A stretch of 64,000 nt of DNA. It comes from Selaginella moellendorffii (taxonomy: Eukaryota; Plantae; Lycopodiophyta). Location: contig NW_003314423.1 of the NCBI RefSeq assembly GCF_000143415.4, forward strand, positions 12,011-76,010. Direction: 5' to 3'. This document shows positions 8,944 to 58,663 of this stretch, piece after piece; position 1 is the stretch's first letter; every line of letters starts with the position of its first letter. The position numbers and the translations under genes were made by a program. Under the pieces are notes generated by a model, which searched no databases, was not told where the DNA came from, and was given only the letters and a program-made list of their open reading frames with translations.

Positions 8944-8992
8944 CACATTCTTGTGACAAGAGCTTTGTGTCTAGACTTTAATCTCTATGGTT

Positions 8993-31780: not shown

Positions 31781-33432
31781 TATACATACTTTTGGAACCC
31801 CCTACAGGTCCCCCCCTCCCCATTCGGACTCAAACTTGGACTCATATTCGACTTGGACTTGGTCTTGAAGTCAAATTCGGTCTCGATTTCGGTCTTGGTC
31901 TCATCTTGGGTCCATCTCGAATTCCATCTCAGGCTCCATCTTAGGTCCATCTTGGACTCCATCTCGGATCCATATCAGACTTCATATCGTACTCCATCTC
32001 AGGTCCATCTTGGACTCCATATCAAACTCTATCTCGAATCCATTTTAGACTCGTTTTTGACACTTCCATATGTCACAACACTTGCCATGTATCAATTCTT
32101 CTTGTGTTCCTTTTAGAAACTCATTCACTGATTGCTTCATGCTCATTTCTCGAGCATTTCGTTGGGAGTTCCATTCCCGCCCTTGACTTTTTAAGTCAGA
32201 GCTTTTAGTCAAAACGTGTTATGCTTATTTGGCTTCCACTTCGGCCATTACCAAAGCTCCACTTTGGGGCTTAGGGGTTTGTGTCTCACAACTCCACCAC
32301 CCATGGAAGAAGTTTGATGTCCTCATTAAATAATAAACCATTTTATAAAGTAACACCATCATATATTACCCTTTCTATCCTTGGTATAGTTTGACACTTA
32401 ATGCTTGCCATACCTTACACATCCTTCAAAAAGTATAATCTCTCCAACTAAGAGACTCATTATACCACTTGTGGTGGTTCTCTCTCTTCATTTGGTTTAG
32501 TTCTCACTAAACCCATTAAAGACACCTTTTCTATCTCAATCCAACTATTCCTTCTCGAGTAGTCTCAGTTTCGATCAACATAACTATCACCCTTTTGGAA
32601 CATTTAATTTTGACTTCTCAAAATTAATTTCTTGGGTGTCTCCAACACCTTGTATTACATATGTCGTGTAAACTCCACTTCCCTATCCTAGGAAGTTCTT
32701 TACTTGAGGACATCATCATCCTCTTTTCTATTTTGTGCCACTCTAGACACTAAATTCCACTTATCTATAATTTGTGTTAGAGTTGTCCATAGCCTTATCA
32801 TTTACCTATCTTGCCACTCCCTCTATTGGAGTTTTCGAGTTTGTCAAATTGGAACATTTGGGAATCCATCTTTATAAACATATTTCATTTCCTAGAATCC
32901 GTTAATATCCAATACATAAGTGTTCATTGCTTAACTTTGTTGTTTGGATTTCTTTTAATGAATCCCATAGCCTTTTCTTAGCCACTAGTTTTTTGCTCCT
33001 ATCCTTTGATTGTTGCACTAAACAATATAGAATCATTACTTCCACCTTTCGATTCCACAACAAAGGCTTTGTTTTGCCAAATCTAAAAGGTGTTCAAACC
33101 TAGTAGGACTCTTTAGCATTTTCTGTTGTGGGCTCTATCCATAACCGAACTTCATGACCCACCCACGGGTCGTTCCTTAGGGATTATTTTCTTGAACTCA
33201 TAATACCATTACATTGTTATAGTTCATTTCCCTTAGATATCCTTCCCATTTAGTCATTTTGACTAAGCCACACCATTACCAACAATTCAAATCAACACTT
33301 TGAACTAAGAACTTTATTCTTTAACTTCAAAAGAACTTTGTCTTTATTTAGCCGTAAAATCACCTAGTGATCTAGCCTTAACACTTTAACAAATTTACTA
33401 ATAGGTACTATGTATTGACCTTCAAGTTGTTA
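31781..33432 (-). mobile_element. Older decayed LTR retrotransposon fragment (LTR split by the 24493-31780 insertion, then pol remnants)
   Basis: LTR-like sequence ends in ..ctcaca at 32290, followed by a PPT complement (actccaccaccc) and degenerate pol-like sequence. Contains the same tttggaacccc motif and hexamer-like repeats as other local LTRs. Confidence 0.55.
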
Positions 33433-34181
33433 TGTAAACCACAAATTTTTCCTTTCCAATTTGCCAGCTTATCTTATCTATCCAACTAATACTGCCTTAG
33501 CCTTAATTAAGTTCCCTTGCCAAGGTTCTCACCTATTGTATCAGCTCCTACTTCGTCCTTGATTTCAGCTATTCCCTGCACAAACAACAGAGTGTTTGCT
33601 ATCTATCCACAAATTCCCAAATCTCTCCTAATCCCCCTCTCTGGGTTAGATTAGACTTAAGGTTCAACTACATTCTCCACAAGCAACCAAGCACACCAAG
33701 CCACCAGGTTCCTAACATCCCTTGGTACAACAAAACTTTATCATGGAACCCTAAGCTCTATTTCGTTAAAGTGGGAATTGTCATTATCCCACTTGTAAAA
33801 TAAGGTTTCCAAACCTTTATATAGTATATAAATATAACAAAATTCAACTGCATTGAGGCACATGCCATTTTATTTTAAACAAGGAAATGTCTACTCAATC
33901 ACTTCTCCTCCCCCTGCCACTGCTTCACCTCTCTCTTCTCCTTGTCATCGTCGTCCAATTTCTTTCCATCCTTTTAATATTGGCTCAGTTGCTCCGAGTC
34001 TAGGTGGAGCCCAAGTCCCCATTCAATCTTTACTTTCCCCTTATTAATAAAACAACTTCGTAGACTTCCAATAACATGCTGTAAATGCAAATCCTCTCAA
34101 AGAATTGTCTTTTAATATTAATACAATGGCATGGAACCCCATGCCACAATAAGTTACATTTTTAAATAAATACATGCCATC

Positions 34182-35031
34182 TCAGACTGTTATTTTTTGC
34201 CTCCAATGCCTATACAATAATCTTGGAATTTCATCACTCTCCACACTATCAGGATTTAAACCCAATAGTAATGCCATCTCTTCTCTAATACGTCCACACT
34301 CATGTTCAGTGGTCGAAGAACCCATCCGGTTGAGCAGATTATGGAGATGCGGATAGTGCTTGGCTAGACAATATACATGCCATAAATGATGACTGGTGTC
34401 TGTCCGATCAAATGGCTTCTGATATACTGTTCCATCTACCATTTGGTTGATTTCTGCAGCCACCTCCTGGATTGGCCGGTTCTCTATCACCATCGCTTCA
34501 AGCCGTTTTGCAAGGTCCCCCAGAACATACGGTTTCTTCTCCCTAGTTTCCATACTGCAAGAGATGGGGTGCACTGCATATGTGTGCGTGTTCGCTGCAG
34601 TTTTAATCGGCGAGTCATCGATGATGAGGATTTCACTTGACCTAGCAGTCCGGTTCATCACTACAGCCTCTGGCTTGACGAAGATGGGCTTGCTACCCCT
34701 CACATGGACCATAGTCAAGCAATCCTCCTGCGTTAGGAGAAAGTCAAATGGTAATATTACTCGCGTCTGATCGTGCATCATCTGTAGCAACGTTAATGCA
34801 TTGTGGCGCATCATGGATGTCCAAACTTCCAATTGCAAATTGAACCCGGCCCTCTGTTTTAAGTGTCGCATGGTCATTATTAGATCCCGCAGTTTCTCCC
34901 GTGTGATTAATGTGAATCTGTCTCTTTTGACCAACTTGCGACCGCAGGCTTTGGAGGGTGCAGTGACATTCGAGGACGAGCCACGCTCATGGGAGAAAAG
35001 GACACCGTTCAGATCAAAAACGATACAGTAC
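34182..35031 (-). CDS. FCP1/NIF-like HAD phosphatase domain (last exon of the cargo gene)
   Basis: FDLNGVL motif just upstream of and in frame with the 250-aa ORF; later LEVWTSMM and IIDDSPIK motifs. Confidence 0.7.
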
Positions 35032-38000
35032 TTTCACCGTGACTCTGAAATGAAATGCGTCAGCATAAAAAATGGTACAAGTCAATTTTACCATCTACAA
35101 TATTAGCGAATGGTGCTCCCGATGGTCGTTTAGAGGGTTTTGGTCGAGGAAACGTGAAGGGCGGAAATACTCTCCTCTGCAATGTGGGGTCAATCGCATC
35201 CGATGGCGTGTGGGCACATGCCATTTCAGCTGTAGACTCTGGTACAACTGGCTCAACAGTGGCATGGGGTGGTTCCGATGGCGTGTGATCACACGCCATT
35301 TCAGCTGGTGCCTCCGTTGGCAAAGTGGACATGACCGAACAGGCAGCAGGGGCGGTGTAGGGAGGTTCCAACGGCGCGTAGTCAGACGATTGGGCACACG
35401 TTGGAAATGAGGATACGACCGGCTTGGCGGCTGGGGCGGCCTCATGCGGGTCCAATGGCGCCTGGTCACCGTCAGTTGGATACGTGGACAAGATTGACTC
35501 AGTGGTATGGGCAGCATCAAGTGGAGCGTGGTCAGCTTGCTTGGCGTTGATATGGATAGTAGCCTCCACCAGCTCTGATGACTCTTGCAGGCAAGTAGAG
35601 TCCACTGGCGGATCCATATGCATGTCCAAATATCTCCCTTCGATTGAGATGGTATCCTCCCGTGCTACTAAAAACAAACTCATTAGCACATTGAATCGAC
35701 TATACTGTATTTACCATCAACTGCTATTGAGGAACTAGGACCGATATCACTTGGGCGCACTGCTGATTCTGAAGGATTGGACATACGTTTCGACCCTTGC
35801 TTGGCACTATCCTTCCTCGACACTAAAGGCTAGAGTTTGTATCTTAATTCAACTGAATAATCTCTACTTACCATTTCTTCTGCGACCTACATGGACAATG
35901 TTAGAAATGGTAAAAGGTTAGGAATGGATGTACTATTATTTACCTGATGGTTTGTCTTGTATGACCTTCCTCCGCTGCTCTTTGGCCACCTCAGGCTGGC
36001 CATCGTCGTCATCATCGTCATTGTCGTTATTGTGATCGTCACCATTGTGAGGACCATCCAAGTCCTCTTCGTCCTCCTCTTCTTCATCCTCCTCTTCTTC
36101 GTCCTCCTCTTCTTTGTCCTCCTCTTCGTCCTTCTGCTCTTCCTGCTCATTATCTTTCTCTGGCTCCTCATCCCCCTCCTACATTTCTTCCATAGGCTGC
36201 TCAGGCTGGATGGCTTGTTTTTCCAGGACCATCTTGCGAAAATCATCTGGCCGAGTCTCCATCTCAAAATACAAGACATCCATAGCCTGTTTTAGTGCGT
36301 GACCTAGGACCGTATCCTCACCCGACTATCTTAACATGGTTTCTGCACGTTCTTGCACCCTTCGAAGACGACGAGATGAGAAAAACGTGGCCCTGACTTG
36401 AAAAGCATCCCTCATCCATTGTACCTCTCTATTGAGATTGGGGAAGGGGAGTCCGCCATAGGAATTTGAGTCAGAAGGTGGTGATTGGCTCCTTTCACTC
36501 AGCCCTTGATCTGCAATGAATGGCATGAGCACACACGCCATAACCGCGAGGCATTACCTATCATCTTTTCGTTGCCCTTCTTCCTTTTCGAATCAAACGC
36601 CTCTGATCCCGACGACTATCCAACATGCTTTCGCTTTTTATGACCACTGTCAGTTTGAGCTTGGCTGGTGCTTGCCTGTTTTGCCTTTGAAGAAGTGTCT
36701 CCTGCAAGGAATGGCATGAGACCACACGCTATTGCAAATATAATTTGTACCTCCTTTTTTCCTATTGCTTGTCTGTTTGTCCTTCTTCGACACGCCACCA
36801 GTGCGCTTTTCAGTCCTCGTGTCTGAATATTCACAACGATCTATAATCAAAATGGCGTGAGGCCTCACGTGACCTTACCTTGTGCAGGTTGTGAGCTCGG
36901 CCTAACATCAGTAGCTGTTAACGCCGTTTCAGCATCTGGGGGTGGCCACGCTCCTGCATACAGAGCTTGTGAAATAACATTTAAACTTAAAGTGCGTACT
37001 CACCAGGTTTGTAGAGAAGATACTGTTTTTCTATGGCAACTGTAATTATATGCTCCATTGAAGTCACCTCTTCAATGGAGTTTGTCACCGCAACACACGG
37101 GACACCCTTGAGTAGTGCGGCTCGAAAGAATAGTCCGCCGCAGTTGTACTCGACAACGCATTTGCCCTTGGAGTCACCTGCTATTGCGTTGAAGACCCAG
37201 CTGAGCATTTCCCATGCTGCACCTGGAGCTTTCTTTGGATTCGAAAGCTCCATAGCCGTCTTCAGTTCCTCAGGCACGGGTAAATTGACCTCCCTCAGAT
37301 CAATTCGATCGGCTTTGTTGAACGAAGCTGGGAAGTCACTCCAGTCCCACTCTGCTGCAGGACCAATAACAAGGGCGAGTGTGAAGATGCGGACATTCGT
37401 CGGTATCTTCTTCTTAGCCATTATCCCATGGATCTCCCGCATCTCCTTGCCTTTCAACCGAGCCTTCACCTCGTTCAAGGCCTTCCAGAACTTGTGATAG
37501 GATTCGGAGTCGTAGATCATATAGTGGACTGAAGATTCCACCTCCGCAAGTCCCACCATTAAGTCAATGATGGAGCTGACTTCGTCTGCATGAGTGATCT
37601 CCTCATTTGTGAAGTCCATCACACAAAAGATGTTCTTGACCTGCTCATCTACGCGGGAAACGATGCTCCTCCACCTTTGATCCTCATCCGAATTCACGTA
37701 TACCTGGTAAGGTTCTCGATAGGCCTCTGCTGCGGGGTCGAGCTGTTTCTAAAGCCGGTGGTCGACATCCCTCTTAATGAAATTTGGATACTGATCCAAC
37801 TTCTCAGCTTTACTTTTCATGGCATCCCGCAGCAGATCGATGAACTTGGGGGCCCCCTTCACGTAGTCGTCGATGTCTTCATTTGACAACTCCAGCTCTT
37901 CCATCATCTCTTGCGTGGTGTCGATGCTCACCCTCGCCACGGCCACTTGCTCGAAGATCCAATCCTTCAATAGCGCACGAGCTCTCAGAGTCGTGCACAA

Positions 38001-39787
38001 GTCCTTGTATGTCACAATATGGCCGGGAGTCATTTTGGTCTTGTTGAAGACTACCTCACCACGTAGAAGAGCATTAGCCACTGTCAGAAGGTTGTCGTCG
38101 TCTAGAGACCGCGAGAAACGCAAGGCGTTGAGCTTCAAATCATTGGGCTTCCGACCGTCCTCCACACCCATTGAGTTTAGCAACTCCCCGTCATGGTACC
38201 TCCTCAGCACATCTACCCATTTGTCAAAAACAACTTTTGTCGCGAGTAGAATGTTATGGATGCTGAGTGTGTCATTGACCCCCAGTGTTTTCGAGAGAAG
38301 ACTCGAGAATTCCTGCAATGGAAATGGCGTGAGGCCACATGCTATGCCACATGCAACGAGGCTTACCTGCCAGGCGCTAGTTGCTAGTGCACGTCCTTGT
38401 CCTGGTTTTTGTGGCTTCTTCAGTTGAACCCAGAGCTTCCGTGTTCGTGCCAATGTCTCGTGCAGACCCGATTTGTAGCACGTTTCTTGCTTGACATTCT
38501 GCGCGTGGGAGATGTATATGATAGATCGGAGGGGCGAGTTGCCTTTTATCAGGCGGACAACTCTTGTCTTGAAGACTTTCTTTACCTCCTCGCCCACCAT
38601 AATATCCACAACTATCTGTTGCATCGCCAAGCTAGAATGCTGCCCGGAGACGGCATAGAACCGGATGTTCTGATCGTCCAACACCTTCCTATTGATCAAG
38701 TCTGGAAACCTCGTCTCGCCCTTCATTGTTCGGTAGTAGGGGATCACGTCTGCGATGTCGGGTGTTACTGGACTTGCCAGCATCTTCTGCTTCTGTTTCT
38801 CCACCCACTCATCAGATACTAGCCTGTGGTTGTATTTGCTTTGGATCTCGATACGGCTCACGTCGATTGTATATACTTTGTTGGAATAGTAACAAGTACT
38901 ATTATCTGCGACGATTTTTGCTGCCTCTTCTTGCTCTTTCTGCTCTTTGCGGCTCTTCTTTTTGGTGGGTGTAGTGTTCGAACCCGAGGCAATGGCATCA
39001 CCGAGTAGCTTCTTTTTTGGAGCAGCAGAGTCGGACGTCGGCTTGAGCTTGACCACCCTTTTCTGCTTCGGGGTAGTTTCCAGATCGACCCCCTTCCCCT
39101 TCGCTTCGCAAACTGGAGGCACTCTCAACGGCTCAATGTTGGAATATAGTTTTTGAACATCGCCGTAGGTGAGGTCCGTGGATTCCATGTGATCTTCATA
39201 GACCCGCAGCGTCTTTGAAATTGTGGGCCTCCTGGACAACCTCTCCCTAGCTCCCTCTAGGAATTCCTCATAGCCGCTGCCCCCCTCCGGGAAGCCGCTA
39301 GGATGTGCAAGGTGGATCTTGAAGGCGGACGCTGTCTCTACCACAAGTGCCAGTCCATATTCTTGCATGGAACTACATGGAGTGTCTGTCACTTGGATGA
39401 GGATCCCCATGCATTCTTTTCTCCCACCATCTGTGTTGTACAGCATCAGATCCTCGCCTTCCATCCCGAAAGTCCAACTGGTGAGCTCCTCCCCCTTCTC
39501 TGCATCCACATTGACAGTAGCTGGAAGAAGAACGCAATTCCTCGCCTGTTCAGAAATGCACAACAATTAGAGCTGACAGATGAAAAGCTAGCAGCTGGAA
39601 ATAACGTGAGGCCACACGCCATTCACCACTGCATCAGATGTCTTGAGGTTGCATCCTAAGATGGCGTGAGGCTACACACCATCTGTAACCGGACTGCACT
39701 CGAGAGCCCAATCGGTGCATGCCAATGTTGCTACTGAATGGCATGTGGCCTCATGCCATTTTCTACTTGGCCTAAAAGACTTACCAT
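34182..39787 (-). pseudogene. Multi-exon TE cargo gene: ParB/Srx-like + degenerate DNA amino-MTase-like + acidic linker + FCP1/NIF-like HAD phosphatase; at least 4 in-frame nonsense codons
   Basis: Predicted ATG 39787-39785, intron 39784-39546, then the 605-aa and 236-aa ORFs, which are in one frame separated by a single TAG (37749-37751). Motifs: IDVSRIEI..FYAVSGQHS; KCVVEYNCGGLFFRAALLKGVPCVAV; D/E tract at 36000-36180; YCIVFDLNGVL..VWTS..ILIIDDSPIK. Confidence 0.65.
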
Positions 39788-42737
39788 TTGAAGCCGAATG
39801 GAGGCCGTGACAATCGAGGCCGGACTCGCTGGCGAATGTGCACTGTGTGTGCAGCGGATCGTAGCAGCAAGGCTACTCTACCACTTACAGTTGGAGAGTG
39901 GTGCTGAAATCTCCCGGGACGCCAAGTGGGCTGCGTGTGGGTGGCGGAGTGGGCGGCGGAGTTGGCGGCGAAGTTACAAACTGGGTGTGTCTTGAAGTGG
40001 ACGCCGATGCACACGAGCGCGATGCGAGCGCGAGTGTGATGCAAGCGCGAGTGGATGCCGATGCACACGAGAAACCTGTAGAGAAGTGAGCGTGATCGCG
40101 AGTGGGAGCGCGATGCGAGCGGGAGCGCGATGCGAGCGGGAGCGCGAGTGTGATACGAGCGCGAGCGCGAGTACAAAGCAAAATGCAAAACCTAACCTCA
40201 CACGCGCGAAATGTCACAACGGTTGGTAATCCTGCCACGTCATCATTCCTCGGACTTGGGCGCCACCATTAATTTCTGGATTGCCGCGCGCATGCAAGCA
40301 CGCAAAATCCAAAAGAAATCCGCAACGTCATCATTCCTCGGACTGCATGCACGCGAAATCCAAAAGAAAGATCATGATTGGGATATCATTTAATACCCTC
40401 GCTATATTTATACCATGCATGATTGGATATTCCAAAGCATCTTGTATTTCCAAAAATGGCAGATGTTCAGCTAAATAAAGAAATTCTATCTGTTTCTATT
40501 TTTCTCTCAAATCAATATTATAGCGTGTGGGCTCATGCAATTTTGAACCAAAGAAACCCAAAAAACGTTAGACCCAAAATATTTTGAAAAAACCCAAAAA
40601 ACCCTAAACATTTTAAACCCAAAAATCCAGGTGTCCTGTGGCGTTATTCCTTGAATGGCGTGTGGGCGCATGCCATTTTCAGGGCCAAATGCTGAATGGA
40701 GAAAAATTCCCTTTCAGTGCAAATGCTGCAAGAGGCAGATGCCGAGCACAAAGGACTGTAACTACCTCACATGACACAGATAAACTTTTCTCTATTTGGC
40801 AAAGATAAACTTTATAGCGTGTGGGCTCATGCAATTTTGAACCCAAAAAATGCACCAAAAAATTCTCGGCGTCATCTGGCGTTATCTCTTGAATGGCGTG
40901 GGGCCGCATGCCATTTTCAGGGGCACATAGGAGTATATTCCTAGGATATTCTGACACGCGCGAGATTTTTTTGAGTTTTCTGGAGATCCAACCGTTAGAT
41001 CGCAACTAGATTTTACAGAATGGTATACAATGTCTTTCTTGATGACCCTGCAAAGAAGCATCTCGATCGGACACCACATAAGACCACACGAGCCTTACAA
41101 TATTTCAGGGGCATTTGCCATAGATCCGACCGTTATTTTGCTCCAAGATTTTACAGTTTGGTGTGCATTGACCTTTCCATCGACACTGCAAAGGGACATC
41201 ACAATCAGATGCGGGATCACAAGAAACTAACTTCACTAACTCTGGTTTCACCAAGATCTACGTAAGGAGTTATGAAATGAAAGGACCCTCTCTATTGAAA
41301 TGTGTTTATGGTTCTAGGGGCATTGTGACATATCAAAGGATTTTGCATCAAGTTCTGTATTTACATGTTTATCAAGCTACTGAATTGCTAAACCCTAAAC
41401 CCTAAACATGTGGCAAATGCTGTGTGAAGAAAGATGCCCTTTCTGGGCAAATGCTGTAAGAGGCAGATGCCGAGCAGATGTATCTCAGGCTAGCGAAGGG
41501 GACAAACGAAAGCTAGCTATAAACATGACGGGATGCAAATAGATTACTAGGCTGGTCCTACGAAAATCAAAAACCATAATTGAAAACATTGAAAATGCAA
41601 AAAGAAAGGTTTATAATATTTTTGAATTTTAAGCAACCAAAGGAATGTAAGTAGGGCATGTGTTTGTAAGTTTAAAAATGCCTCAACCACTTAAATTCCC
41701 AAGTAAATAAAGCTGTTTCTATTTTTGGTACAGGTAAACTTTATAGCGTGTGGGCTCATGCAATTTTGAACCCAAAAATGCACAAAAAAATGCTCGACTA
41801 GCATTATTCTTTGAATGGCGTGTGGCCTTATGTCGAGCATTATTCTTTGAATGGCGTGTGGCCTTATATTGCCATAAATGGACGTACACACACAGCATAA
41901 TTATTCCTTTACACGGCAAATAATCTTGGTGCGGATCGCTGACATGGCATGGCAAAGTTCGAATCACTGACATGGCACAGCTGGATCGAGGCAAGGACAT
42001 GATGTGACAAAGTTCAACCTCCGACAGCAAAGTCTAGAAGCTACTCAGTTTGAAATTTGTCAAAGGAATCATAAGATCTGGTTTGTCAGAGGATTTGATG
42101 TGACGTTCAAGCGTGTGTTATTTTTGAATTCTCGAACTCATTCCTAGGTCTATCATTTTTGTGCGCCGTGTTCTTGGTTCTGCTGAGCGCAGTGAGCGCT
42201 GCTTGTGTAAGCGGCGTTGTGGGCTGTGGTTTATGCGTCTACGAGCGGTTGCGGCATTGCGAGCGCCATTGCGAGCGGCAGTTTATGTGAGTGGCAGTTT
42301 GTGCGAGCGGCGCTACGAGCAGTTGCGGTGTTGCGAGCGACGCTACGAGTAGTTGCGGTGTTGCGAGCGGCACTGTCTTTGGTGTGGCTACCGCTTCCTC
42401 TTGATATTCGGCACTTGTGCTTCCTGGTATGTTCACCATGGAATGGCTTAGGACCACATTTAGAAATGGCATGAGGCCACATGCCATCTTGGGCCCTTGC
42501 AATTTCATGGCTAGCGTATTGTCATGTATGTTTTTACTTGCCTGCAGTTGTGTGTATATCAAGATGGCATGAGGGCTCATGCCAATTTTGTGAATGCGAA
42601 ATTTCACGTGGGTGTCAATAGCATGTTTGAATAATGGCATGTGGCCTCATGCTATTGAGGTTGTTTGGTATGTTATGATTTAGGCCATTCTCCAATCATT
42701 TTTTGTATGGTCTTAACTTCTTTTCTGCACTTTCAGA

Positions 42738-45700
42738 ATGGCCTTCAGGGTTGGGGAAAAGGTTTACATTTTGAATGGTGGGAAGAGAGTTGCAAAAGGG
42801 ACCCTTGTGTCTATGGATCGGAACTTTGTTATACACTGTCAAAGGCTTAGGGAAGGCAATGCTGCTGTATCAGTAGAGACTGTCTTCGATGGGAATGTGG
42901 TCGCTATTGAACGAGGAGAGATGGTCGTCGGGGTAAATGTTGTTGTTGCCTTGAAAAATCTTCAGAAGAAAGCAGATGTTGGGGACAGCGCAAGTGCGAT
43001 GCATGTTCCCTCCGTGGATCTTAAGAACCGTGCTACATGGATTCAGGCAAAGGTGTTTCTAAACAACCCCGAGGGGGAGGTGGTAGCTGAGGGCTTAGCC
43101 ACAGTTGTCGATCCAAGAGATGCGGTTGCTAATCAAGAATTGGGCTGGGATGATATTGGAGTTGCGATTTTAGAGGTTGTTGACACAGAAGAAAACAGTC
43201 TGACTATTGGAAGCATTGTGCGGTGGAAATTGAGGCACTTAGTGTTTGAGAATGTGAAGGATTCACAATCAAACACCATTACAACTGATGACAGAACATC
43301 TCTTCATGGGAAAAGAAAGTACACCTTCCTAAAGCGCAGCCAAAGGGATCTGAGCAACGAACCGAAAAGGCAGAAAATGGCGATGGAGGTTCGAATGGTC
43401 TCGACAGTTGCTTGTTGCAAGAGGAGGTGCTGTCAACATGCTGATTGGGATGCTATTGAAGAGGAGAGAGCAAGATACAAGACATTGTCCTGGAAGGCAG
43501 CTCGCAATTTTGTGTATGAGGCATTACGGTCATCTGTTGATGCTTCAGAACATCAGGTGGGGGGCATGGTCTTCCAGAAGGGTTTGGTCTGCATGAAGGC
43601 ATGGAGAATCATTTATGGAGTCCCTCGAACCACATTCTACAGAATCAAAACTGAGTTCGAGGAACAAAGGGTTCAACAGGCAGTCCATGGGAACGACGGT
43701 ACGCACAAAACCAGGGGTCATGTTGTATATGGAGAGGCAATCTTCAAGAGGTTTGTCGAGACATGTAGCGAGCAGCAACCACATAAAACCCGCCTCTTGG
43801 AAGATGGAACACGAGACACCCAACGAGTTCTCCCTTCCATGTATACCAAGGGGGCCATATTGGAAGATGTGAATCGGGAACTCCAGAGTAATGGCTACAG
43901 GAAGCTGAGCCAATCTAGATTTAGTAGATTGTGGAGCAACAGGTTCAGGGATGTGAGTATAGGAAAGTACTCCAGCTTTTCAAAGTGTGACGAGTGCACT
44001 GCTATCAAAATGGCTTTGTCGAAGAATTTTTGCAGCGCTCAAGAGCGAGAGATGTTGGTTAGAAGGCGGCTCGACCACAACATCGAGCAGAGAAGCTGCA
44101 GGACTGCATATTATCATAACAGGATTCTCTCCATGGAGAGACCTGACTCTTACCTCTGCATCATCCACGACAAAATGGACCAGAAAAAGACATGCTTACC
44201 TCGACTCAATCCTGCCCCCAAGGCAATCTCTTCATCCATGCAGCTGCCTGTGTCTCTGTTTGGCATAATCGCTCATGGGCATGGTGCCCAGAACTATGGG
44301 AACTTCTTTGTACCTCTATGGGGTGGCGGGGGTGCAAACATGATGATTGCGTCCCTAGCAAAACACTTAAGGTCTCTGCAAAGTGCGCAGACTGAGCTGA
44401 ACGGCCAACCCTTGCATAAGGCCCTTGTCGATCAAACCCCATACAGGGTTCAGCTGGAGGAGGAGCAAAGGCTTGCAGTATCGCGTGGGGCCCCATGCCA
44501 TCCCAGTGAATATGTTGGCCGTCAGATTGTAGGGTTATCACGTGAGGCCTCATGCCATTCCGACGAGGCTGGTCGCCCGGTGAATGCACAGCCTCATCCA
44601 AACGAAGCAGAATCTCAAGGAAGTTCTTGCGGCCGATGTGGCCTTCCACCCCATCTTCTGCTCCAAACAGACAATGCTGGCAGTGAGAACAAAAACATGT
44701 ACGTCTTCGCGTACTTGGCGATGCTTGTTGCCAAAGGCATATTTGAAACGGTTACACTTGGCTTTCTCATGGTTGGGCACACTCATGAAGACGTCGATGC
44801 CATGTTCAGTCACCTAGCAGAGTCCCTCTGGCGATCCAATGTCCTCACCCTCCCACAACTCTACGATGAATTCCAAAATTGCATCAAAGGCACTGTTGAA
44901 GCTGCACTTCTGACAGAGGTTCCAGACTTTAAGGGGTTTGTAAGAGGCTACATCAGGGACGGATCCGAAATGCTGATTAGCCACTCCAAGCCTCTTCAGT
45001 TTCATTTCAGCATGTGTGACGATGCTCCAGTGATGAGGTACAAGATGAGAGAATGGGACACAGTGTGGCTGCCAGTGGACGGCATTGAACTCTTCAAGAG
45101 AGATCCCATAACTGGGGAACCTATGATTCCTCAGGGTTCCCCACGGCCGATGCACCCGGATGGACTCAAAGACCAGGAAAGTATAGTGGCCGGGATTAGA
45201 CAGCATATTGCCTTCTGGAAGAGGGGGTTGGTGTTTGGTGGAGAATCCTATTTTCAGAGGTGCAAACCTTTGCTCGAATACTGGGAGAAGATTATATCTG
45301 CTATCCAAAATGGGCCGGTTGTATATGAAGAATTGGAAGAGTCCTTTTGGCCAGAACCCAGAGCACCAGATAGTAGCGGAACAATGTCCTCTGGAAATGC
45401 AGTGACAGATAACGATGTTGAGGATCACTATTGTGGGCCGAGGAACAAGAAGCCGGATTCAGCATTCAATCCAGTACAGGTCTGCAAAGGAATGGTCGTG
45501 CTTGTCAGACCCAGTAATAAAAAACAAATGATATGGGTGGGGCGCTGCATCACTGATGCAGAGGAGGACGCAGAAACTAACTCCTTCAATATAACTGTGG
45601 AGTGGTTCAAGCCAAGTTCCGGATATACGAACGATTGCCTAGAAAAGAGATGGGTGCTGAATCCAAGGGATCCCAGCATGAGCATATCGGTGGATAATGT

Positions 45701-45879
45701 TGTGCATGGTTGGATGCGGAAGCAGAGTGCCACCATCACCTTGCCAGACCATGCAAGAGATGCAGCAAGAGCATTCATAACCCGGGTTCAAGGTGAGATT
45801 CATGAATATTCCTTTACTAAGTTTCTAATGTATTTTATTTCAAGGTGAACAATCCGAATCTGAATCAGAGGAGGCGTGA
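42738..45879 (+). CDS. DD(D/E) transposase, Sola-like (DUF7869-type), about 1030 aa; small terminal exon 45845-45879
   Basis: Open 1036-codon ORF with CCKRRCC, FSKCDEC..H, IIHDKMDQKKT, LLLQTDNAGSENKN, FLMVGHTHEDVDAMFS. Predicted intron 45793-45844 gives ..TRVQGEQSESESEEA*; 5'-UTR intron 42427-42736. Confidence 0.88.
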
Positions 45880-47669
45880 TGGCATGTGGCCTTACGCCAT
45901 TCCTAAGTGAGATGATACAAATAACAAATAACAAGATCTTTCTCTAAAATGTTATTTAGCATGTGGCTTCATGCCATTGCTCTCCACAATCATGCATTGA
46001 ATTTCTATCCTTGCATAATACTTCTCCATATATATAGCATGTGCGCACATGTGATAGGGTTCATTAGGCCTGATATAGTGTGTGAGGTAAAACAAAGATG
46101 ATGTGACATATGCATTTACCAATCACACGTGCATAAATCTAATAATATGGCGTGTGGCCCATATTAATGGCACATAAACCCATATTGTGGGCTTACGTGC
46201 TTTATGTACCATCATTCCCTTGCAGCGTGTGTGTTGGTTTCCTTTTATAACACAACGAACTCCATATTTTAGGGTGAAGAGCGTTCTCATGGCAAGCACA
46301 AAATCTGTAAGTGAGGCAGAAAAGGAGACGGAGAAGGAGATAGGTGAAGATGTAGAATATATAAGTCTTCCAAACTCCCTGTACTATACTCCAGGTGATC
46401 ATTTTTCTGAACAAACGGCAACATTAACAACTATCGAGAACGCCCCAGTAACGTCAGAGACAACAATCCAAAGCAAAACAACTGACCCGGAGAAGGATGA
46501 TAGTACCGCTGAGAGTACCAAAAAGGAGGTGTCCACTAGCGCTTAGGCTTATAATGGCGTGTGCCCTCATGCCATTTACTTGATCACCAAATACCTTTTT
46601 CCCTTTGCACTAGTATATCTTAATACCGGTCTGAGAAATAGAATGGCATGTGCCCTCAGGCCTTTTACTAAATCACCTTTGAAAGAAATGCAAGCCTCTA
46701 TGTCGTAAAAAAAAGGTACTAGAGAAATTCCTTAATAATATGAATGTTATTTAGTTTCATGAAAATACACTAAGGGTCAAATGAGTTAAATGACTTCTCC
46801 AGACTAGCAATGCCTCTTGCTACACCTTCACAATTAGATTCGTTAGAAAAAGATAACATTGAATAATATCTAAATGTTCTCACCATTAAGTTATATGTCT
46901 GGCTAATAGGAATGACGTTCATCTTGGAAAGCTCACCACACGCTCAATGAACAAACAAATAGTGTGTGCGCGCATGCCATCGCTCTTCTTTAGCTTCAGA
47001 TTCGGCTTGTTCACCTTGACAATGAGATTTATTATACAACCAGATGGACTCAGTCTGGACATAAAGTCACCGCGCTAGTCACCATGCCCCAGATATGTCT
47101 AGCCCCTGGACAAAAAACGTATAATTTCACGTCATTTTCAAATACTTGAAAATTTGTACCTAGTCCCATTTTACTGAATAAATCCCACTTTAACGAAATA
47201 GAGCATCCCTTTAAATCCTAAACCTTGGGCGTAACATTTACTTCGGGACATCAGGGGTAAACATCATGGCCTAATGGCTTGGTATGGGTACCCCTACTCC
47301 CCCACTTCCATCCCAAAGGGAAAACTTAAGCCCTTAGAAAGGGTGAGGACCAATGAGCCGCAAAGTACTCAAGTGGGGCACCACTCCACATGAGCCGAAA
47401 GCACCGCAATCAATTTCCTTTCTGGGAGTGGGAGCTACTCTTGAACACTTCCTTGGGTGGCCCCTCCAGCACCACCTGAGTCCATGCTCATTCCCCTCAG
47501 CTATAGTCTCAACCTCAAGTTAGTTTGGAAGCATCATTAAAGAGTTCCTTCAAAACTAATTCCTAGACCTCACTATATACTTTTGGAACCCCCTACAGCT
47601 GTGCCCCCCCCCCCCCTTAGGAGACACACGCTTTGGGCTTTCACCCCACGACCTATATTAGTATTTAGA

Positions 47670-47935
47670 CTCAATCTCGCACTCGATCTTGGATTTGATT
47701 TCGGACTTGACCTTGGACTCTACCTCGAACTCGGTCTTGGACTCGATCTGGGACTCGATCTTGGACCGACCTTGGACTGTCTCGTACTTGATCTCGGATT
47801 GGATCTCGGACCCCATCTCAGATCTCAGACTCGGTCTCAAACTCAGTTTCGGAGTCGGTTTTGAACTCAATCTTGGACTCAGTCTCGAACTTGGTCTTAG
47901 AGTCGGTCTCGAACTCGATCTTAGACGCAGTCTCA
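47670..47935. repeat. Degenerate hexamer-like tandem array within LTRs (also 31830-32050, 55260-55335, 60415-60565)
   Basis: Repeating ggactc/gatctt/ggtctc/gaactc units. Confidence 0.7.
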
Positions 47936-49974
47936 TCCGATGAACTCTTTATCATTTGGGTCATACTCTTGGGGATCCTTTAGCCTTCGACATCTAGGGG
48001 AGTTAGTTCTTTATAACTCCACCACCTATAGAAAAAATTCGATACCCACATTCAACGCCTCTTTTTTAATCCTACAATGTGTTGACCATGTTTCCAAGGG
48101 CATCCCCCACTTAGCGGTGTGCCTGAGTTAGCCTCCCAAGCCGAAAGCCCATGACAACAGAATATAAGTGTCCCTATACCCCTCTCATCACCATGCCCTA
48201 GTATGGGGTTGGGACTTGAACCCAACCTTGCTTTACTAGAGGGTTGGGAGTCGAACCCAACCTCTGTAGAATACATTTATGGATTTGACATCCCCATGGG
48301 GAGTCAGGCGTAGTTCCCTACACATGGTCAATATAGCTAACCTATGCTAATTAGCTTACTTTCGGGTCCTAACATACGACATTGCTCAATTTCTCAAAAT
48401 AGATTATTTTAATTGAATTTTGCATAAGTACATAAAGTTCTACCTTGCAAAAATTCCTCCACTAAATCCCATGCGTTCGCTAGGTTTTCCTCCGGTTCCC
48501 ATATTGCTTCATAGTATGGAAATCCTTTCCACTTCACATGGAACTCCCTCACCTCACGTCTTTATCGCTTATTCTTACACGCATTGAGGATGGCCTCGGC
48601 TTCGTATTCCTCTTCCCTTGGATAACCTCAGGTAAAGGTCTTATTTGGTCCTTGCGAAACGGATCCTCAAAGTATTGCTTGAGTAAGTTACATGGAACAC
48701 CGGGTGTATCTTCCCCATCTCTTGAGGAAATCGAAGGTGGTAAACCATATTACCAATTCGTGCTTCAATCTCGTAAGGCCTTACGAACCTGCTTAAAGAA
48801 CTCAAGATTAGTTCTTTTCAGGAATACATGCATTTTTACCTTTGGGTTAGCTTTCGGCTAATCCCACTTGGTAGCCTTAGATTTTTGGTGTTCAGCCACA
48901 CCTTCTCCCCAGGTTAGAATTCCACATCCTAGTGCTTATGGTTCACATATTTGGTTTGCATTTGTTGAGCCTGTTCAAAAGAATCCCTCACTAAATTCCA
49001 AATGTTGAGTCTTTCCACTGTGAATGCCTCCACTATGGGTAACTCTCCATGATATTCGGCCACACCGAGTTCCACAGAACCTTCAATAGCTCGCTTATTG
49101 ATGACTTCTCATGGACTCACCTTGATACTTGAGTGTGGTGAGTTGTTATGGCACATTTCTACAAGAGGTCTGTCATGACACTCTTCCAGGTTACCTTCCT
49201 CAGTTCCCCTTTTGGAATATACACCCTCATTTGTTTATAATAGATAAGCCTATTGCATTTTGCATAACCTATTTTCTCTTCCGTTGGCAGCTCCCCTCTT
49301 TAGTGAGCTTCCTGTGCCTCTTGGTTCCTCAGCAACATTTCTTGTGCTAGACCATCGATTTCATACACTATCCACACATCATTCCAAAAAGTTGTTGTCG
49401 CGCTGGATATCACCAATTTCAAGTTCGCTTTTCAACTTAGAGCATCCACCATGATGTTGCTTTTCCCAGGTTTATACAGAATCTCACAATCAACTCGGCC
49501 AAAGCATTGGCCCACCGACCCTATTTCTCTCTCAGGTTGGGTTGTGACAAGAAGTGTTTTATTGCCACATTATTTGTGTAAACTTTGAAGTGTCTCCCAA
49601 GGTAGTGTCACCACTCCTTGAGTGTCTTGACCACCGCAAACAATTCCTTCTCATGGAACAGACCACTTTCGCTGAGCCTTGTCCAACTTCTTCAAGAAGA
49701 ACACTATTGGATGGTTGTCTTGCTTCAAAATTGCGCCCAATGCAAACTCTGAAGCATCCATTTCCACCTCAAAGTCCTTACTAAAGTCTGGTAACACCAA
49801 TACAGTAGTCTTCCTCAACTTCCTTTTGAGGTGGACAAATGCCGCTTCACATTCCACTGTCTATACCATTTTCCCTTTTCCTATTTGGTCAGTTGAAGGT
49901 AGGGTTACTCTCGAATAGTGTTTGATAAACTTTTGGTAGTAGTTGCATAGCCTCAAGAATGCCCTTAACTTGTG

Positions 49975-50954
49975 TGTAAGCAACCAAAGGGAACGACTCG
50001 AGATATGATCCATTGGGGTTCAAATATAGAGGGAAAGGGCCCATGAACAAGAGCACCCCCTTTTCCAATCGGTTAAGGGTCTTGGGATATTTGGGGTTAA
50101 GTGTCCTTGGGTTTGAATAGTACTAGGTTGGGTGACCTCTCAGGAAGTCCAAAACTCAGGAGCTTACATTTGGTATCAGAGGGGTCTCGAGTCCGACTCT
50201 GTTGGTTGGCTAAGGGAATCACACCACATGTTGATTGACATCTGGCTAGTCCAGTTTGCTCCCACTGGGCTCAACTCGAGAGGTAGGGTGTCAAGAGAGC
50301 TGCGGCTCTCAGCTTCCGTTCACGAGGGCGTGAACTTGCAGGGAAGCATGGTGGATTGTAAGCAACCAAAAGGAGGGCGTGAACTTGCAGGGAAGCATGG
50401 TGGATTGTAAGCAACCAAAGGGAACAACTCGAGAGACGATCCATGGGGTTCAAATATAAAAGGAAAGGGCCTATAAACAAGAGTGCACCCTCTTTTCCAA
50501 TCGGTTAAAGGTCTTGGGATATTTAGGGTTAAGTGTTCTTGGGTTTGAATAGTACTGGGTTGGGTGACCTCCCGGGAAGTCCAAAACTCAGGAGCTTACA
50601 TTTAGTATCAGAGGGGTCTCGGGTCCGACTCTGTTGGTTGGCTAAGGGAATCACACCACATGGTGATTGACATCTGGTTGAGGGGTAGGGTGTCAAGAGA
50701 GCTGCGGCTCTCAGCTTCCGTTCACGAGGGCGTGAACTTGTAGGGAAGCGTGGTGGATTGTAAGCAACCAAAAGGAATGATTCGAGAGACGATCCGTTGG
50801 GGTTTAAATATAAAGGGAAAGGGCCCATGAACAAGAGTGCACCCCCTTTTCCAATCGGTTAAGGGTCTTGGGATATTTGGGGTTAAGCGTCCTTGGGTTT
50901 GAATAATACTGGGCTGGGTGACCTCTCGGGAAGTCCAAAACTCAGGAGCTTACA
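49975..50954 (+). mobile_element. Cassandra TRIM tandem array (LTR-int-LTR-int-LTR) with 5S rRNA-derived LTR segment
   Basis: ~195-bp TG..CA LTRs at 49975-50168, 50406-50600, 50759-50954; PBS tggtatcagag after the first LTR; purine-rich PPT; TSD TTGTG on both sides. Each LTR has GTTAAG(C/T)GT..TTGGG..TAGTACT.GG.TGGGTGACCTC..GGAAGTCC, the 5S internal control region. Confidence 0.92.
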
Positions 50955-53626: not shown

Positions 53627-54769
53627 CGTAGGTTGTACGAATCCTCACCTCCATCATTTCTTAAGTGGCCACCGGTCCTTTGTTAGCCTCTGTTGTTCTC
53701 TACTAAGACTTAACATTATCTGCCAAGTATGGTTTTGCATATGGGACCTTCTTTAAGCTCAGTAACTACAACGCTCAGAAGTAATTTTCCATATCATAAA
53801 ACCAATCCTCCACCACCTTATAGTCATTCATTCCCTTGAAGACCGATGGGGGCTTTATTTTGTACTTGGGAATTGCCTGAGGGACTGATTCCACTTTAAT
53901 TTATTCGACCTTGTTCGGTTCCACCTCAGTCCCTACCAAAGGGTCCACACCTTCTGCATTGCTAACATCTGTAGTCTTTCACTTTTTCTTCCGCTTTTTA
54001 TTTTGTATACAAGAGTCTCCAATAGGGCATTGGTCTGAGCCAATTGTCCTTCTAGAACATCCAATTGAGCCTTGGATGACCGAACCTCACCACTGGACTC
54101 CTGTTTGGAAGTTTCCTCACTGGAGTCCTCCTTATGTAAGGATTCCTCATCCATAGCCTCTTGTTTGACTAGAAGCTCCAGCTCTAAAAGAGGTTCTATC
54201 TCCGCCTTACAAACTACCTTTGTCATCTCTTAGCAATCCGCCTTTATCCTTCGCTAAAACTGAGGAAAAAGTTTTGATACCAAATTGTAAGCCATAAATT
54301 TTTCCTCTATAATTTACTAGCTTACCCCGTCTATCCGACCAATATTGCTTTAGCCTTAATTAAGTTCCTTTGTTAAGGTTCCCACCTATTGTACTAGCTC
54401 CTACTTCGTACTACTTGGTTTCAACTACTCCCTACACAAACAATGGAGCATTAGCCATCCATCCACGGATTCTCAAATCTTTCCCAATCCCCTTCCCTAG
54501 GTTAGATTAGATTTAAGGTTCAATTACACTCTCCGCAAACACAAGCAACCAAGCACACCAAACCACCAAGTTCTTAACATCCTTTGGTACAACAAGACTT
54601 AATCATGGAACCCTTTAAATCCCAAGCTTTAGGTGCAACACTTGCTTCCGGACACTAGGGGGAAATACCATGGCCTAATGGCCCAATATAGGTACCCCTA
54701 CTCCCCCACTTCCATCCCAAAGGTAAGGCCCAAACCTCTAGGAAGGGCAAATATCAATGAGCCGCCATA

Positions 54770-58572: not shown

Positions 58573-58602
58573 ATTCTTTCTTCAATCAAGCATATAATTT
58601 TA

Positions 58603-58663
58603 CCCCGTTTCCGGGGATCGAACCCGGGTCGTCTGCGTGACAGGCGGAGTATACTCCAACGAC
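58603..58663 (-). pseudogene. tRNA-Asp pseudogene
   Basis: Copy of 14045-14116 with an 11-nt deletion in the D-arm and acceptor-stem substitutions. Confidence 0.88.

What the first reader, a model, noticed from the sequence alone, without database searches (positions are those of the whole stretch)
34182..39787. Cargo gene reconstructs as one ParB-N / MTase-like / acidic / FCP1-like polyprotein
The ORF track shows disconnected pieces, but splicing and read-through join them. ParB/Srx-like domain ~38880-38480 (IDVSRIEI..NHRLVSDEWVE..FYAVSGQHS, compare the GxHR motif). Rossmann MTase-like domain 37700-37010 (FCVMDF at the motif IV position; CVVEYNCGG..AALLKGVPCVAV resembling VLDPFxGSG..AAxxxGRxxIG; beta-class order, probably catalytically dead). 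Long D/E tract, then a HAD domain with DLNGVL. ParB-N + N6/N4 methylase fusions are known from phages; FCP1-family enzymes dephosphorylate the Pol II CTD. Fusion in a plant TE suggests a DNA-binding chromatin/transcription modulator (inference). Junctions between 35.7 and 36.0 kb are the least certain.
Basis: partly seen in the sequence, partly recalled or inferred. Interest (0 to 1): 0.82.

Follow-up and report, generated by a model that had tools for sequence, protein, structure and literature searches.

The report
Transposon accessory gene: ParB–dead methylase–phosphatase
A 13.5-kb plant DNA transposon carries, opposite its transposase, one long decayed gene for a protein joining a ParB-like domain, a probably inactive DNA-methylase-like domain and an FCP1-like phosphatase domain, and the element is studded with its own palindromes that such a protein could recognise.

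Summary
On the minus strand, 39787 to 34182, ten canonical GT-AG introns (38-239 nt) join the ORF pieces into one frame of about 1,640 codons. All three domain calls were confirmed:
- ParB/Srx fold, by AlphaFold plus Foldseek.
- Beta-class N6/N4 DNA methylase, by a profile hit to M.RsrI (E 3e-7) and Foldseek. The catalytic DPPY-type motif is missing across the family.
- NIF/FCP1-like HAD domain, above the Pfam threshold. Motif I is DLNGV, not DxDxT.

- The "read-through" is five in-frame stops (four TAG, one TGA), so this copy is a pseudogene.
- The gene is not captured cargo. It is the conserved second gene of a transposon family with a DUF7869 transposase, TIRs and a 4-bp TSD. An uninterrupted copy of the insertion site lies in the same window.

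The liverwort Riccia sorocarpa has the same two-gene layout, at least 49 paralogues and single gene models with all four domains.

ParB+methylase accessory genes were recently reported in algal transposons (Ectocarpus Sola1). The land-plant version with an added phosphatase-like domain is a new variant.

Each of four element lineages carries tens of copies of its own palindrome, often in introns. These are plausible parS-like sites.

The parts
33753..47206 (.). Whole DNA transposon (13,454 bp). It is flanked by the 4-bp duplication CCCT (33749-33752 and 47207-47210).
   Evidence: An uninterrupted paralogous copy of the flanking repeat at 54286-54765 aligns to 33433-33752 and then directly to 47207-47361, sharing CCCT.
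33753..33779 (+). Left terminal inverted repeat. Its partner is 47180-47206, matching at 25 of 27 positions.
   Evidence: Inverted repeat I2; sequences read.
47180..47206 (-). Right terminal inverted repeat.
34182..39787 (-). Accessory gene. It has 11 exons and 10 GT-AG introns: 39784-39546, 38366-38313, 37003-36954, 36878-36841, 36750-36702, 36557-36511, 35943-35887, 35871-35823, 35714-35665 and 35091-35045. The frame is about 1,640 codons with 5 in-frame stops.
38925..39545 (-). N-terminal region of unknown fold plus a Lys-rich (NLS-like) linker.
   Evidence: It aligns to the N-terminal parts of P0002, P0003 and P0010. No family match.
38367..38924 (-). ParB/Srx-fold domain with the conserved motif SGQHS.
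   Evidence: Alignment A1. AlphaFold model pLDDT 73. Foldseek against PDB gives Noc 7ol9_B at E 9e-5 and all top 50 in the ParB/Srx superfamily. BFVD agrees.
37752..38312 (-). Middle helical domain of unknown family.
   Evidence: Homologous to P0005, P0026, P0031, P0013 and the Riccia proteins. Its profile finds nothing significant among solved structures.
37749..37751 (-). First in-frame TAG. The other in-frame stops are TAG at 36618-36616, 36328-36326 and 36181-36179, and TGA at 35036-35034.
37004..37748 (-). Beta-class N6/N4 DNA-methylase-like domain. The motif IV position reads MDFT and the motif I position reads VVEYNCGG.
   Evidence: Profile A3 against M.RsrI 1eg2 gives E 3.4e-7. The Foldseek top hits are M.BceJIV, CcrM, M1.HpyAVI, MboIIA and PvuII, although the model is low-confidence (pLDDT 54).
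35990..36178 (-). Acidic D/E tract. It is preceded by a basic K/R/S-rich linker (36953-36182).
   Evidence: Translations.
35092..35664 (-). Pro/Ala/Thr-rich repetitive linker exon. It holds two palindromes read in frame.
34584..35030 (-). NIF / FCP1-SCP-like HAD domain. Motif I is FDLNGV and motif IV is IIDDSP. A C-terminal extension follows, down to 34185.
   Evidence: Pfam PF03031 at 25.1 bits (cut-off 21.8), E 1.6e-5. Profile A5 against UBLCP1 3shq gives E 8e-5.
42738..45848 (+). Transposase ORF, 1,036 aa, apparently intact.
   Evidence: Pfam DUF7869 at E 2e-41. About 160 columns of the 6-sequence alignment are invariant, including HDKMDQ, DN..ENKN and GHTHEDxD. Relatives occur in Riccia, bivalves and Symbiodinium.
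34126..46980 (.). Array of 25 copies of the 22-bp palindrome ATGGCRTG-N6-CAYGCCAT, all inside the element.
   Evidence: (expected by chance 0.02).
54286..54765 (+). Uninterrupted paralogous target site, used to define the element ends.

Best explanation
The region is the second, accessory gene of an autonomous cut-and-paste DNA transposon. The transposon has a DUF7869-type DDE transposase and is most likely of the Sola1 kind. It sits in a seed-free land plant.

The gene encodes one large nuclear protein with these parts in order: an N-terminal region, a ParB/Srx domain, a helical domain, a beta-class N6/N4 DNA-methylase fold that has lost the catalytic tetrapeptide, acidic and Pro-rich linkers, and an FCP1/SCP-type (NIF) HAD domain with an atypical motif I.

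Proposed mechanism (inferred, not shown). The ParB-like/helical part recognises the element's own palindromes. These are parS-like sites scattered through the promoters, introns and ends of the element. Binding would tether the methylase-like module, acting as a DNA or SAM binder rather than an enzyme. It would also tether the CTD-phosphatase-like module to the element's chromatin, where they could tune its transcription or protect it from silencing.

The copy in this window is no longer functional. It has five in-frame stop codons, while the transposase ORF next to it is still open.
For: Shown.
- Element boundaries, TIRs, a 4-bp TSD and an uninterrupted paralogous copy of the target site.
- A single continuous frame after removing canonical introns.
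- ParB/Srx fold.
- Methylase homology.
- NIF domain.
- The same divergent transposase/accessory-gene layout in Riccia sorocarpa locus L001.
- At least 49 Riccia paralogues at 36-83% identity that keep LVFLD[LV]T, HPxxK and VLDFFSGG.
- Single Riccia gene models (P0029, 1,064 aa) with ParB, helical, methylase and NIF parts.
- The same domain order on an unrelated ENA contig, L004.
- Element-specific palindromes in four lineages, each with a different sequence and each about 1,000-fold or more above chance. In three lineages a copy lies in the intron or gap just after the ParB exon.

Literature.
- Ectocarpus Sola1-1_Ec32 carries a ParB + N4/N6 methylase gene on the strand opposite the transposase, and the authors propose self-binding and self-modification (PMC12477816).
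- Red-algal Plavaka elements have a ParB-fusion gene next to arrays of inverted repeats (bioRxiv 10.1101/2025.02.11.637652).
Against: - There is no transcript evidence here. The introns are predicted only from splice-site consensus, frame continuity and homology, and the 38-nt intron is unusually short.
- One Riccia locus is annotated as two genes.
- The ParB-like domain lacks the GxxR arginines of CTP-binding ParB (it reads SGQHS). No HTH could be shown in the helical domain.
- The palindromes could equally be transposase-binding sites. L003 shows them beside a transposase, with no accessory gene on the contig.
- The methylase model has low confidence (pLDDT 54).
- Motif I of the HAD domain lacks the second Asp, so phosphatase activity is doubtful.
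- The Sola1 assignment rests on the TSD length (from my memory of the Sola description) and on analogy with Ectocarpus, not on a transposase phylogeny.
Confidence: 0.72

Rival explanations
1. The accessory protein is an active enzyme pair. It would write N6-methyladenine or N4-methylcytosine on the element's DNA, as proposed for the algal ParB-methylase proteins, and dephosphorylate the Pol II CTD.
For: The methylase fold and the HPxxK...VLDFFSGG block are conserved and resemble M.RsrI. The nucleophile Asp, the motif III Lys and the motif IV Asp of the HAD domain are invariant. The algal relatives are described as predicted 4mC/6mA methylases (PMC12477816).
Against: No family member examined has the (D/N/S)PP(Y/F/W) tetrapeptide: the window reads DFTN, Riccia D[LV]THP, Selaginella DLRR, and others DSAN and DATT. 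Motif I reads x[SCT]GG rather than FxGxG. HAD motif I is DxE/N, not DxD. The window copy has five stops in any case.
Confidence: 0.15
2. The palindromes are transposase-binding sites or structural features of transposition. The accessory protein would then act elsewhere, for example on host chromatin or the silencing machinery, without recognising the element.
For: Palindromes cluster in the subterminal regions and beside the transposase gene in the window, L001 and L003. Many DNA transposons have subterminal transposase-binding repeats (general knowledge).
Against: The sites are not confined to the ends. They lie in introns of the accessory gene and form a 15-copy tandem array at the 5' end of the ParB gene in L004. 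This pattern is more like parS or operator sites. A ParB-fold protein is encoded in cis.
Confidence: 0.25
3. The pieces are separate neighbouring genes (ParB-like; methylase-like; NIF-like), or a chance mosaic of captured host fragments as in Pack-type elements.
For: Riccia L001 is annotated as two genes. The Selaginella homologue P0005 has only the helical and methylase-like parts. There is no RNA evidence.
Against: A single frame persists across 4.9 kb and ten introns. The same order of parts occurs in Riccia, L004 and Selaginella. Three or more Riccia models span all domains. None of the domains has a close host paralogue: identities to anything else are below 35%.
Confidence: 0.08

Closest known systems
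Sola1-1_Ec32 accessory protein of the brown alga Ectocarpus (ParB-like + N4/N6 DNA methylase, 1,104 aa; PMC12477816), with the similar green- and red-algal transposon proteins cited there
   Same: A giant cut-and-paste transposon. The accessory gene is transcribed from the strand opposite the transposase. A ParB-like domain is followed by a beta-type DNA-methylase domain. The proposed role is binding or marking the element's own DNA. The 4-bp TSD here fits Sola (from memory of the Sola description).
   Different: This is a land-plant lineage. It has an extra C-terminal FCP1/SCP-like HAD domain and long acidic and Pro-rich linkers. The methylase lacks the catalytic tetrapeptide in all members seen. 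I could not compare sequences directly with the Ectocarpus protein.
Plavaka PAG3 (ParB-like + 2OG oxygenase) and PAG2 (N6A methylase + SET) of the red alga Bostrychia (bioRxiv 10.1101/2025.02.11.637652)
   Same: A ParB-like N-terminal domain is fused to a chromatin or DNA-modifying module in a transposon accessory gene. Arrays of inverted repeats lie next to the gene and are proposed as binding sites.
   Different: The transposase superfamily differs (KDZ/Plavaka). The effector domains differ. The methylase is on a separate protein.
Bacterial and phage ParB-methylase fusions and ParB-parS systems (Noc, ParB, KorB; PDB 7ol9, 6sdk, 8qa9)
   Same: The ParB/Srx fold is shared. It is linked to an N6/N4 methylase. 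Short palindromic sites are present in many copies on the replicon that encodes the protein.
   Different: The family has no GERRxR CTP-binding motif (it reads SGQHS, closer to the DGQHR/DGQQR wording of the DndB and GmrSD-N clade). No HTH was shown. The gene is eukaryotic, has introns and encodes a presumably nuclear protein. No ParA partner is present.
FCP1/SCP/UBLCP1 family of CTD phosphatases (Pfam NIF, PF03031; PDB 3shq, 1ta0)
   Same: The HAD fold family is shared. The nucleophile Asp, the motif III Lys and the motif IV Asp are conserved.
   Different: Motif I is D-x-(E/N)-G-(L/V) instead of DxDx(T/V). The domain is part of a transposon protein.

Membership tests
ParB/Srx superfamily | ParB/Srx alpha-beta fold | tested here: met
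   AlphaFold model (core pLDDT 85-95). All 50 best PDB matches are ParB/Srx proteins, the best at E 9e-5. BFVD gives mainly the same.
ParB/Srx superfamily | GxxR (GERRxR) nucleotide-binding arginine motif of CTP-dependent ParB | tested here: not met
   The strand-loop-helix at that place reads SGQHS in the window and S/DGQH(S/T) in relatives. No Arg is present.
ParB/Srx superfamily | Sequence-profile match to Pfam, NCBIfam or PDB ParB families | tested here: not met
   No hit in Pfam, NCBIfam or a PDB profile search. Membership rests on fold only.
ParB/Srx superfamily | Adjacent HTH DNA-binding domain with cognate palindromic sites | tested here: inconclusive
   Palindrome arrays are present, but the helical domain matches nothing. 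Binding is not testable here.
Beta-class N6/N4 DNA methyltransferase (Pfam PF01555) | Homology and fold, with the permuted order motif IV before motif I | tested here: met
   The family profile hits M.RsrI at E 3.4e-7 over the HPxxKP...VLDxFxG block. Thirty-eight of the 41 Foldseek matches with E <= 0.001 are beta-class methylases. The invariant Asp strand precedes the GG loop.
Beta-class N6/N4 DNA methyltransferase (Pfam PF01555) | Pfam gathering threshold | tested here: not met
   The window piece has no PF01555 hit. Riccia copies score 19-20 bits against a cut-off of 26.7.
Beta-class N6/N4 DNA methyltransferase (Pfam PF01555) | Catalytic (D/N/S)PP(Y/F/W) tetrapeptide | tested here: not met
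   The window reads DFTN, Riccia D[LV]THP, Selaginella DLRR, and the others DSAN and DATT.
Beta-class N6/N4 DNA methyltransferase (Pfam PF01555) | FxGxG SAM-binding loop | tested here: inconclusive
   The loop reads EYNCGG (window) or DFFSGG (Riccia). A Gly pair is kept, but the spacing and flanks are altered.
FCP1/SCP (NIF) HAD phosphatases (PF03031) | Pfam gathering threshold and family profile match | tested here: met
   25.1 bits against 21.8. Riccia scores E 7e-11. The profile hits UBLCP1 at E 8e-5.
FCP1/SCP (NIF) HAD phosphatases (PF03031) | DxDx(T/V) motif I with both aspartates | tested here: not met
   The window reads DLNGV. Most Riccia paralogues read DVEGL or DIEGL. Only the first Asp is invariant.
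FCP1/SCP (NIF) HAD phosphatases (PF03031) | Motif III Lys and motif IV acidic residues | tested here: met
   K120-P121 and D139 are invariant. The window keeps IIDDSP.
Sola1 DNA transposons | TIRs and a 4-bp target-site duplication | tested here: met
   27-bp TIRs (25 of 27 matching) and a CCCT duplication, shown against an uninterrupted paralogous copy of the target site. The 4-bp figure for Sola is from memory.
Sola1 DNA transposons | Transposase within the Sola1 clade | not testable with these tools
   Only Pfam DUF7869 and DUF8039 are available. No Sola1 reference sequences are at hand. The host range (bivalves, dinoflagellate, bryophytes) is compatible.
Sola1 DNA transposons | ParB-methylase accessory gene opposite the transposase (as in Sola1-1_Ec32) | tested here: met
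   The layout is divergent in the window and in Riccia L001. The comparison is with PMC12477816.

The most novel reading that the evidence does not exclude
A family of land-plant (bryophyte/lycophyte) transposons carries a self-recognition system. It consists of a ParB-fold protein and lineage-specific parS-like palindromes kept in introns, promoters and ends. The system would deliver a pseudo-methylase and a CTD-phosphatase-like module to the element's own chromatin, to steer Pol II (or Pol IV/V) activity and escape silencing. This would be a eukaryotic, transposon-borne analogue of ParB-parS. A truncated, apparently host-resident derivative exists in Selaginella.
Probability: 0.3. Interest if true: 0.78.

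Novelty: new variant of a known kind. Interest (0 to 1): 0.62.

Why it matters
Accessory genes of eukaryotic DNA transposons are poorly understood. ParB-methylase proteins were noticed only recently, and only in algae.

This work extends them to land plants and adds a CTD-phosphatase-like domain that points at transcription. It also shows that the methylase has probably become a non-catalytic module.

It gives a concrete, testable candidate for the DNA target: a different short palindrome in each element lineage, present in tens of copies. If the ParB-like part binds these sites, the system would be a simple model for how a transposon marks its own DNA. It would also supply programmable protein/site pairs.

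Tried and rejected
- The word-based homologue search with the 605-aa piece found nothing. The exhaustive search found 17 hits, of which P0001, P0004 and P0008 are low-complexity artefacts.
- The metagenome scan with the ParB alignment found no confirmed locus.
- Single-sequence searches of solved structures gave nothing for any piece. Neither did Pfam or NCBIfam scans of the individual ParB-like sequences, nor the ParB profile against PDB sequences.
- The profile of the middle helical domain gave no significant match.
- I tried to explain the first TAG by an intron. One 84-nt GT..AG span would keep the frame, but the segment is alignable coding sequence in homologues, so I rejected it. No frame-preserving intron fits the other stops.
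- I considered that the Marchantia 4mC methylases (MpDN4MT1) might be relatives. They keep TSPPY (bioRxiv 10.1101/2021.02.12.428880), and nothing links them to this family.
- Literature searches for DUF7869, and for a ParB/CTD-phosphatase transposon protein, found no prior description.
- I could not obtain the Sola founding papers to check motifs.

Full report
**Context**

The window is nuclear DNA of a land plant. Several intronless PPR genes with E motifs lie at 7.2-14 kb and at 57.5-58.3 kb. The finding lies inside a 13,454-bp DNA transposon at 33753-47206.

The transposon's ends are defined precisely. Another copy of the flanking repeat, at 54286-54765, is uninterrupted. It aligns to 33433-33752 and then directly to 47207-47361, and the four bases CCCT are shared by both junctions. 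The element starts and ends with 27-bp inverted repeats that match at 25 of 27 positions.

Two genes diverge from a 2.9-kb central region:
- An open 1,036-codon transposase ORF on the plus strand (42738-45848). It matches Pfam DUF7869 at E 2e-41.
- The gene of the finding, on the minus strand.

**Checking the observation**

- a 605-codon piece, followed in the same frame, after one TAG, by a 253-codon piece;
- several short pieces, including an acidic tract;
- a 216-codon Pro-rich piece;
- a 283-codon piece starting ...CIVFDLNGVLF.

I located nine internal introns with canonical GT...AG ends and good consensus, of 54, 50, 38, 49, 47, 57, 49, 50 and 47 nt. Removing them gives 4,944 nt, an exact multiple of three, in one frame down to the terminal stop at 34184-34182. 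It is followed by a 239-nt intron whose acceptor restores the same frame.

The intron after the ParB domain is independently supported. ORFs called in several relatives end at W-K/Q-V exactly there. The annotated Selaginella protein joins ...EWQ to ASEFESF where the window joins ...AWQ to EFSSLL.

Five in-frame stops remain: four TAG and one TGA. The first lies in a stretch that is alignable coding sequence in relatives, and it has no usable splice sites. The 'read-through' is therefore nonsense mutation, and this copy is a pseudogene. Stops that are mostly TAG would fit C-to-T decay of methylated CAG in a silenced element; that is inference only.

**Relatives**

An exhaustive HMMER search with the 605-aa piece found 17 proteins, 14 of them credible, at 23-34% identity. 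They come from the liverworts Riccia sorocarpa and Calypogeia fissa, from Selaginella moellendorffii, and from unnamed ENA, Logan and JGI assemblies.

The Riccia locus L001 has the same layout. A transposase homologue on one strand (E 3e-46) diverges from a ParB-like gene, which is followed by a gene with methylase-like and NIF parts.

A search seeded with the Riccia protein P0029 found 49 paralogues on many chromosomes at 36-83% identity. Many are labelled FCP1-homology proteins, and one is labelled a DNA methylase N-4/N-6 protein. P0029 (1,064 aa) contains in one model the ParB-like, helical, methylase-like and NIF parts. P0035 and P0037 (1,265 and 1,367 aa) carry the same ParB and methylase motifs and a NIF domain.

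An ENA contig, L004, shows ParB-like, then helical, then methylase-like in the same order.

The gene is therefore not captured cargo. It is a conserved accessory gene of this transposon family.

**ParB/Srx domain**

Ten sequences were aligned over window 38924-38307 (alignment A1). The invariant residues include G-Q-H within S/DGQH(S/T), two Arg and an Asn.

The AlphaFold model has a mean pLDDT of 73, with 85-95 in the core. Its 50 best PDB matches are all ParB/Srx-fold proteins: Noc, ParB, PadC, sulfiredoxin, SbnI, KorB, Atu1540 and Pfu-392566. The best is 7ol9_B at E 9e-5. In the viral library the matches are phage ParB-like nucleases, GmrSD N-terminal domains, a DndB-like protein and phage DNA methylases.

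No sequence profile detects the relationship, and the GERRxR arginines are absent. The fold is established. CTP-dependent clamp behaviour is not.

**Methylase-like domain**

Six sequences were aligned (alignment A3). Their profile matches the beta-class N6-adenine methylase M.RsrI at E 3.4e-7. The match covers the block HPTQKP...VLDFFAGSG...GR... Riccia copies give sub-threshold Pfam N6_N4_Mtase hits.

The AlphaFold model of the window piece is poor (pLDDT 54). Even so, 38 of its 41 matches with E <= 0.001 are beta-class N6A/N4C DNA methylases: M.BceJIV, CcrM, TTHA0409, M1.HpyAVI, MboIIA, a type III Mod subunit, PvuII, RsrI and the rotifer N4CMT.

The strand that should end in (D/N/S)PP(Y/F/W) keeps only the Asp:
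- window: MDFT
- Riccia: LD[LV]THP
- Selaginella: ADLRR
- others: DSAN and DATT

The SAM loop is x[SCT]GG rather than FxGxG. The motifs LVFLD[LV]T, HPxxK and VLDFFSGG are nevertheless kept across divergent Riccia paralogues, which suggests a retained non-catalytic role.

**NIF/FCP1-like domain**

The last piece passes the Pfam NIF threshold, at 25.1 against 21.8 bits. Riccia copies score up to E 7e-11. A seven-sequence profile hits the CTD-phosphatase relative UBLCP1 (3shq, E 8e-5) and weakly hits SCP1.

The nucleophile Asp, the motif III Lys and the motif IV Asp are invariant. Motif I is DLNGV in the window and DVEGL or DIEGL in most Riccia paralogues, not DxDx(T/V). Catalysis is therefore uncertain.

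**Palindromes**

While translating, I saw the peptide strings MRPHAI and ACGLTPF recurring. They come from a 22-bp palindrome, ATGGCRTG-N6-CAYGCCAT. It has 25 sites, all inside the element, against 0.02 expected by chance. Their positions:

| Location | Sites |
|---|---|
| Short introns of the accessory gene, including the intron after the ParB exon | 7 |
| Between the two genes | 8 |
| A variable loop of the transposase ORF | 2 |
| The Pro-rich exon | 2 |
| Subterminal | 6 |

The other lineages each have their own palindrome:
- Riccia L001 has 27-34 sites of a different 16-bp perfect palindrome, TCGGGACGCGTCCCGA. They lie in equivalent places, including the transposase variable region and the intron after the ParB exon.
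- Contig L003 has a transposase 37% identical to the window's. It carries 20 sites of CCTATGGC-N6-GCCATAGG upstream of the transposase.
- L004 has about 28 sites of CAACGC-G-GCGTTG. Fifteen form a tandem array of 26-bp period at the 5' end of the ParB gene, and two lie in the gap after the ParB exon.

Lineage-specific palindromes in tens of copies, encoded alongside a ParB-fold protein, recall ParB-parS. They also recall the inverted-repeat arrays noted next to a ParB-fusion gene in red-algal Plavaka elements (bioRxiv 10.1101/2025.02.11.637652). Whether the ParB-like protein or the transposase binds them cannot be decided here.

**Comparison with what is known**

- The Ectocarpus transposon survey describes, in the 21.5-kb Sola1-1_Ec32 family, a 1,104-aa protein encoded opposite the transposase. 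It has a ParB-like domain and an N4/N6 DNA-methylase domain. [quoted passage not shown]
- Aravind and colleagues had catalogued eukaryotic methylases derived from phage ParB-linked loci (PMC4738411).
Its transposase family occurs in bivalves and a dinoflagellate as well as bryophytes. I could not run a phylogeny against Sola1 references, so that assignment is provisional.
- I found no description of a land-plant member or of the added FCP1-like domain.

**Verdict**

The gene is a decayed copy of a conserved transposon accessory gene. It is a new variant (land plant, pseudo-methylase, added CTD-phosphatase-like domain) of a recently recognised kind.

The mechanism, self-recognition through palindromes followed by modulation of transcription or silencing, is inferred. 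I hold it with moderate confidence.

Noticed in passing
window 34126-46980; L001 954-15568; L003 34-4663; L004 123-6425: Each of four related elements carries 20-34 copies of its own short palindrome. The sequence differs in each lineage. Copies often sit in short introns, including the intron right after the ParB exon, and in a variable loop of the transposase gene. Each set is about 1,000-fold or more above chance.
   Followed up: yes
window 37751-37749, 36618-36616, 36328-36326, 36181-36179, 35036-35034: Four of the five premature stops in the accessory gene are TAG, while the neighbouring 1,036-codon transposase ORF has none. This would fit C-to-T decay at methylated CAG, or relaxed selection on the accessory gene only. 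Neither idea was tested.
   Followed up: partly
window 38366-35045 (introns of the accessory gene): The predicted introns are very short (38-57 nt), and several are little more than a splice donor, a 22-bp palindrome and a pyrimidine-rich acceptor.
   Followed up: partly
L002 10001-11425 (Selaginella moellendorffii, protein P0005): A 451-aa annotated protein has only the tail of the ParB domain, the helical domain and the methylase-like domain. It lies among ordinary host genes (ArfGap, VQ, SCAR) with no transposase nearby. It may be a domesticated or stranded derivative.
   Followed up: partly
window 7261-14009 and 57441-59166: Clusters of intronless PPR genes (E-motif class), including three adjacent ORFs of 561, 719 and 821 aa.
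   Followed up: no
window 49975-53595: A complex of about 200-bp direct repeats (families D2-D5), partly tandem, of unknown nature.
   Followed up: no
window 31824-32052, 47653-47949, 55250-55314, 60410-60565: Blocks of a degenerate 12-nt periodic repeat (TCGGACTCNATC-like). They flank copies of the repeat into which the transposon inserted. Flanking repeats 47331-47648 and 60073-60399 are related.
   Followed up: no
window 62445-62588: Two tandem 72-nt units, 92% identical, that look like leucine-rich-repeat coding units (NxLxGxIPxxFG...).
   Followed up: no
window 3824-4759: An ORF with a weak PHD-finger match (E 0.003, below the Pfam cut-off).
   Followed up: no
protein P0083 (Logan assembly, 3.6-kb contig): A transposase fragment 97% identical to the window's transposase exists in a public sequencing run. 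No equally close relative of the accessory gene was found in the same collections.
   Followed up: no
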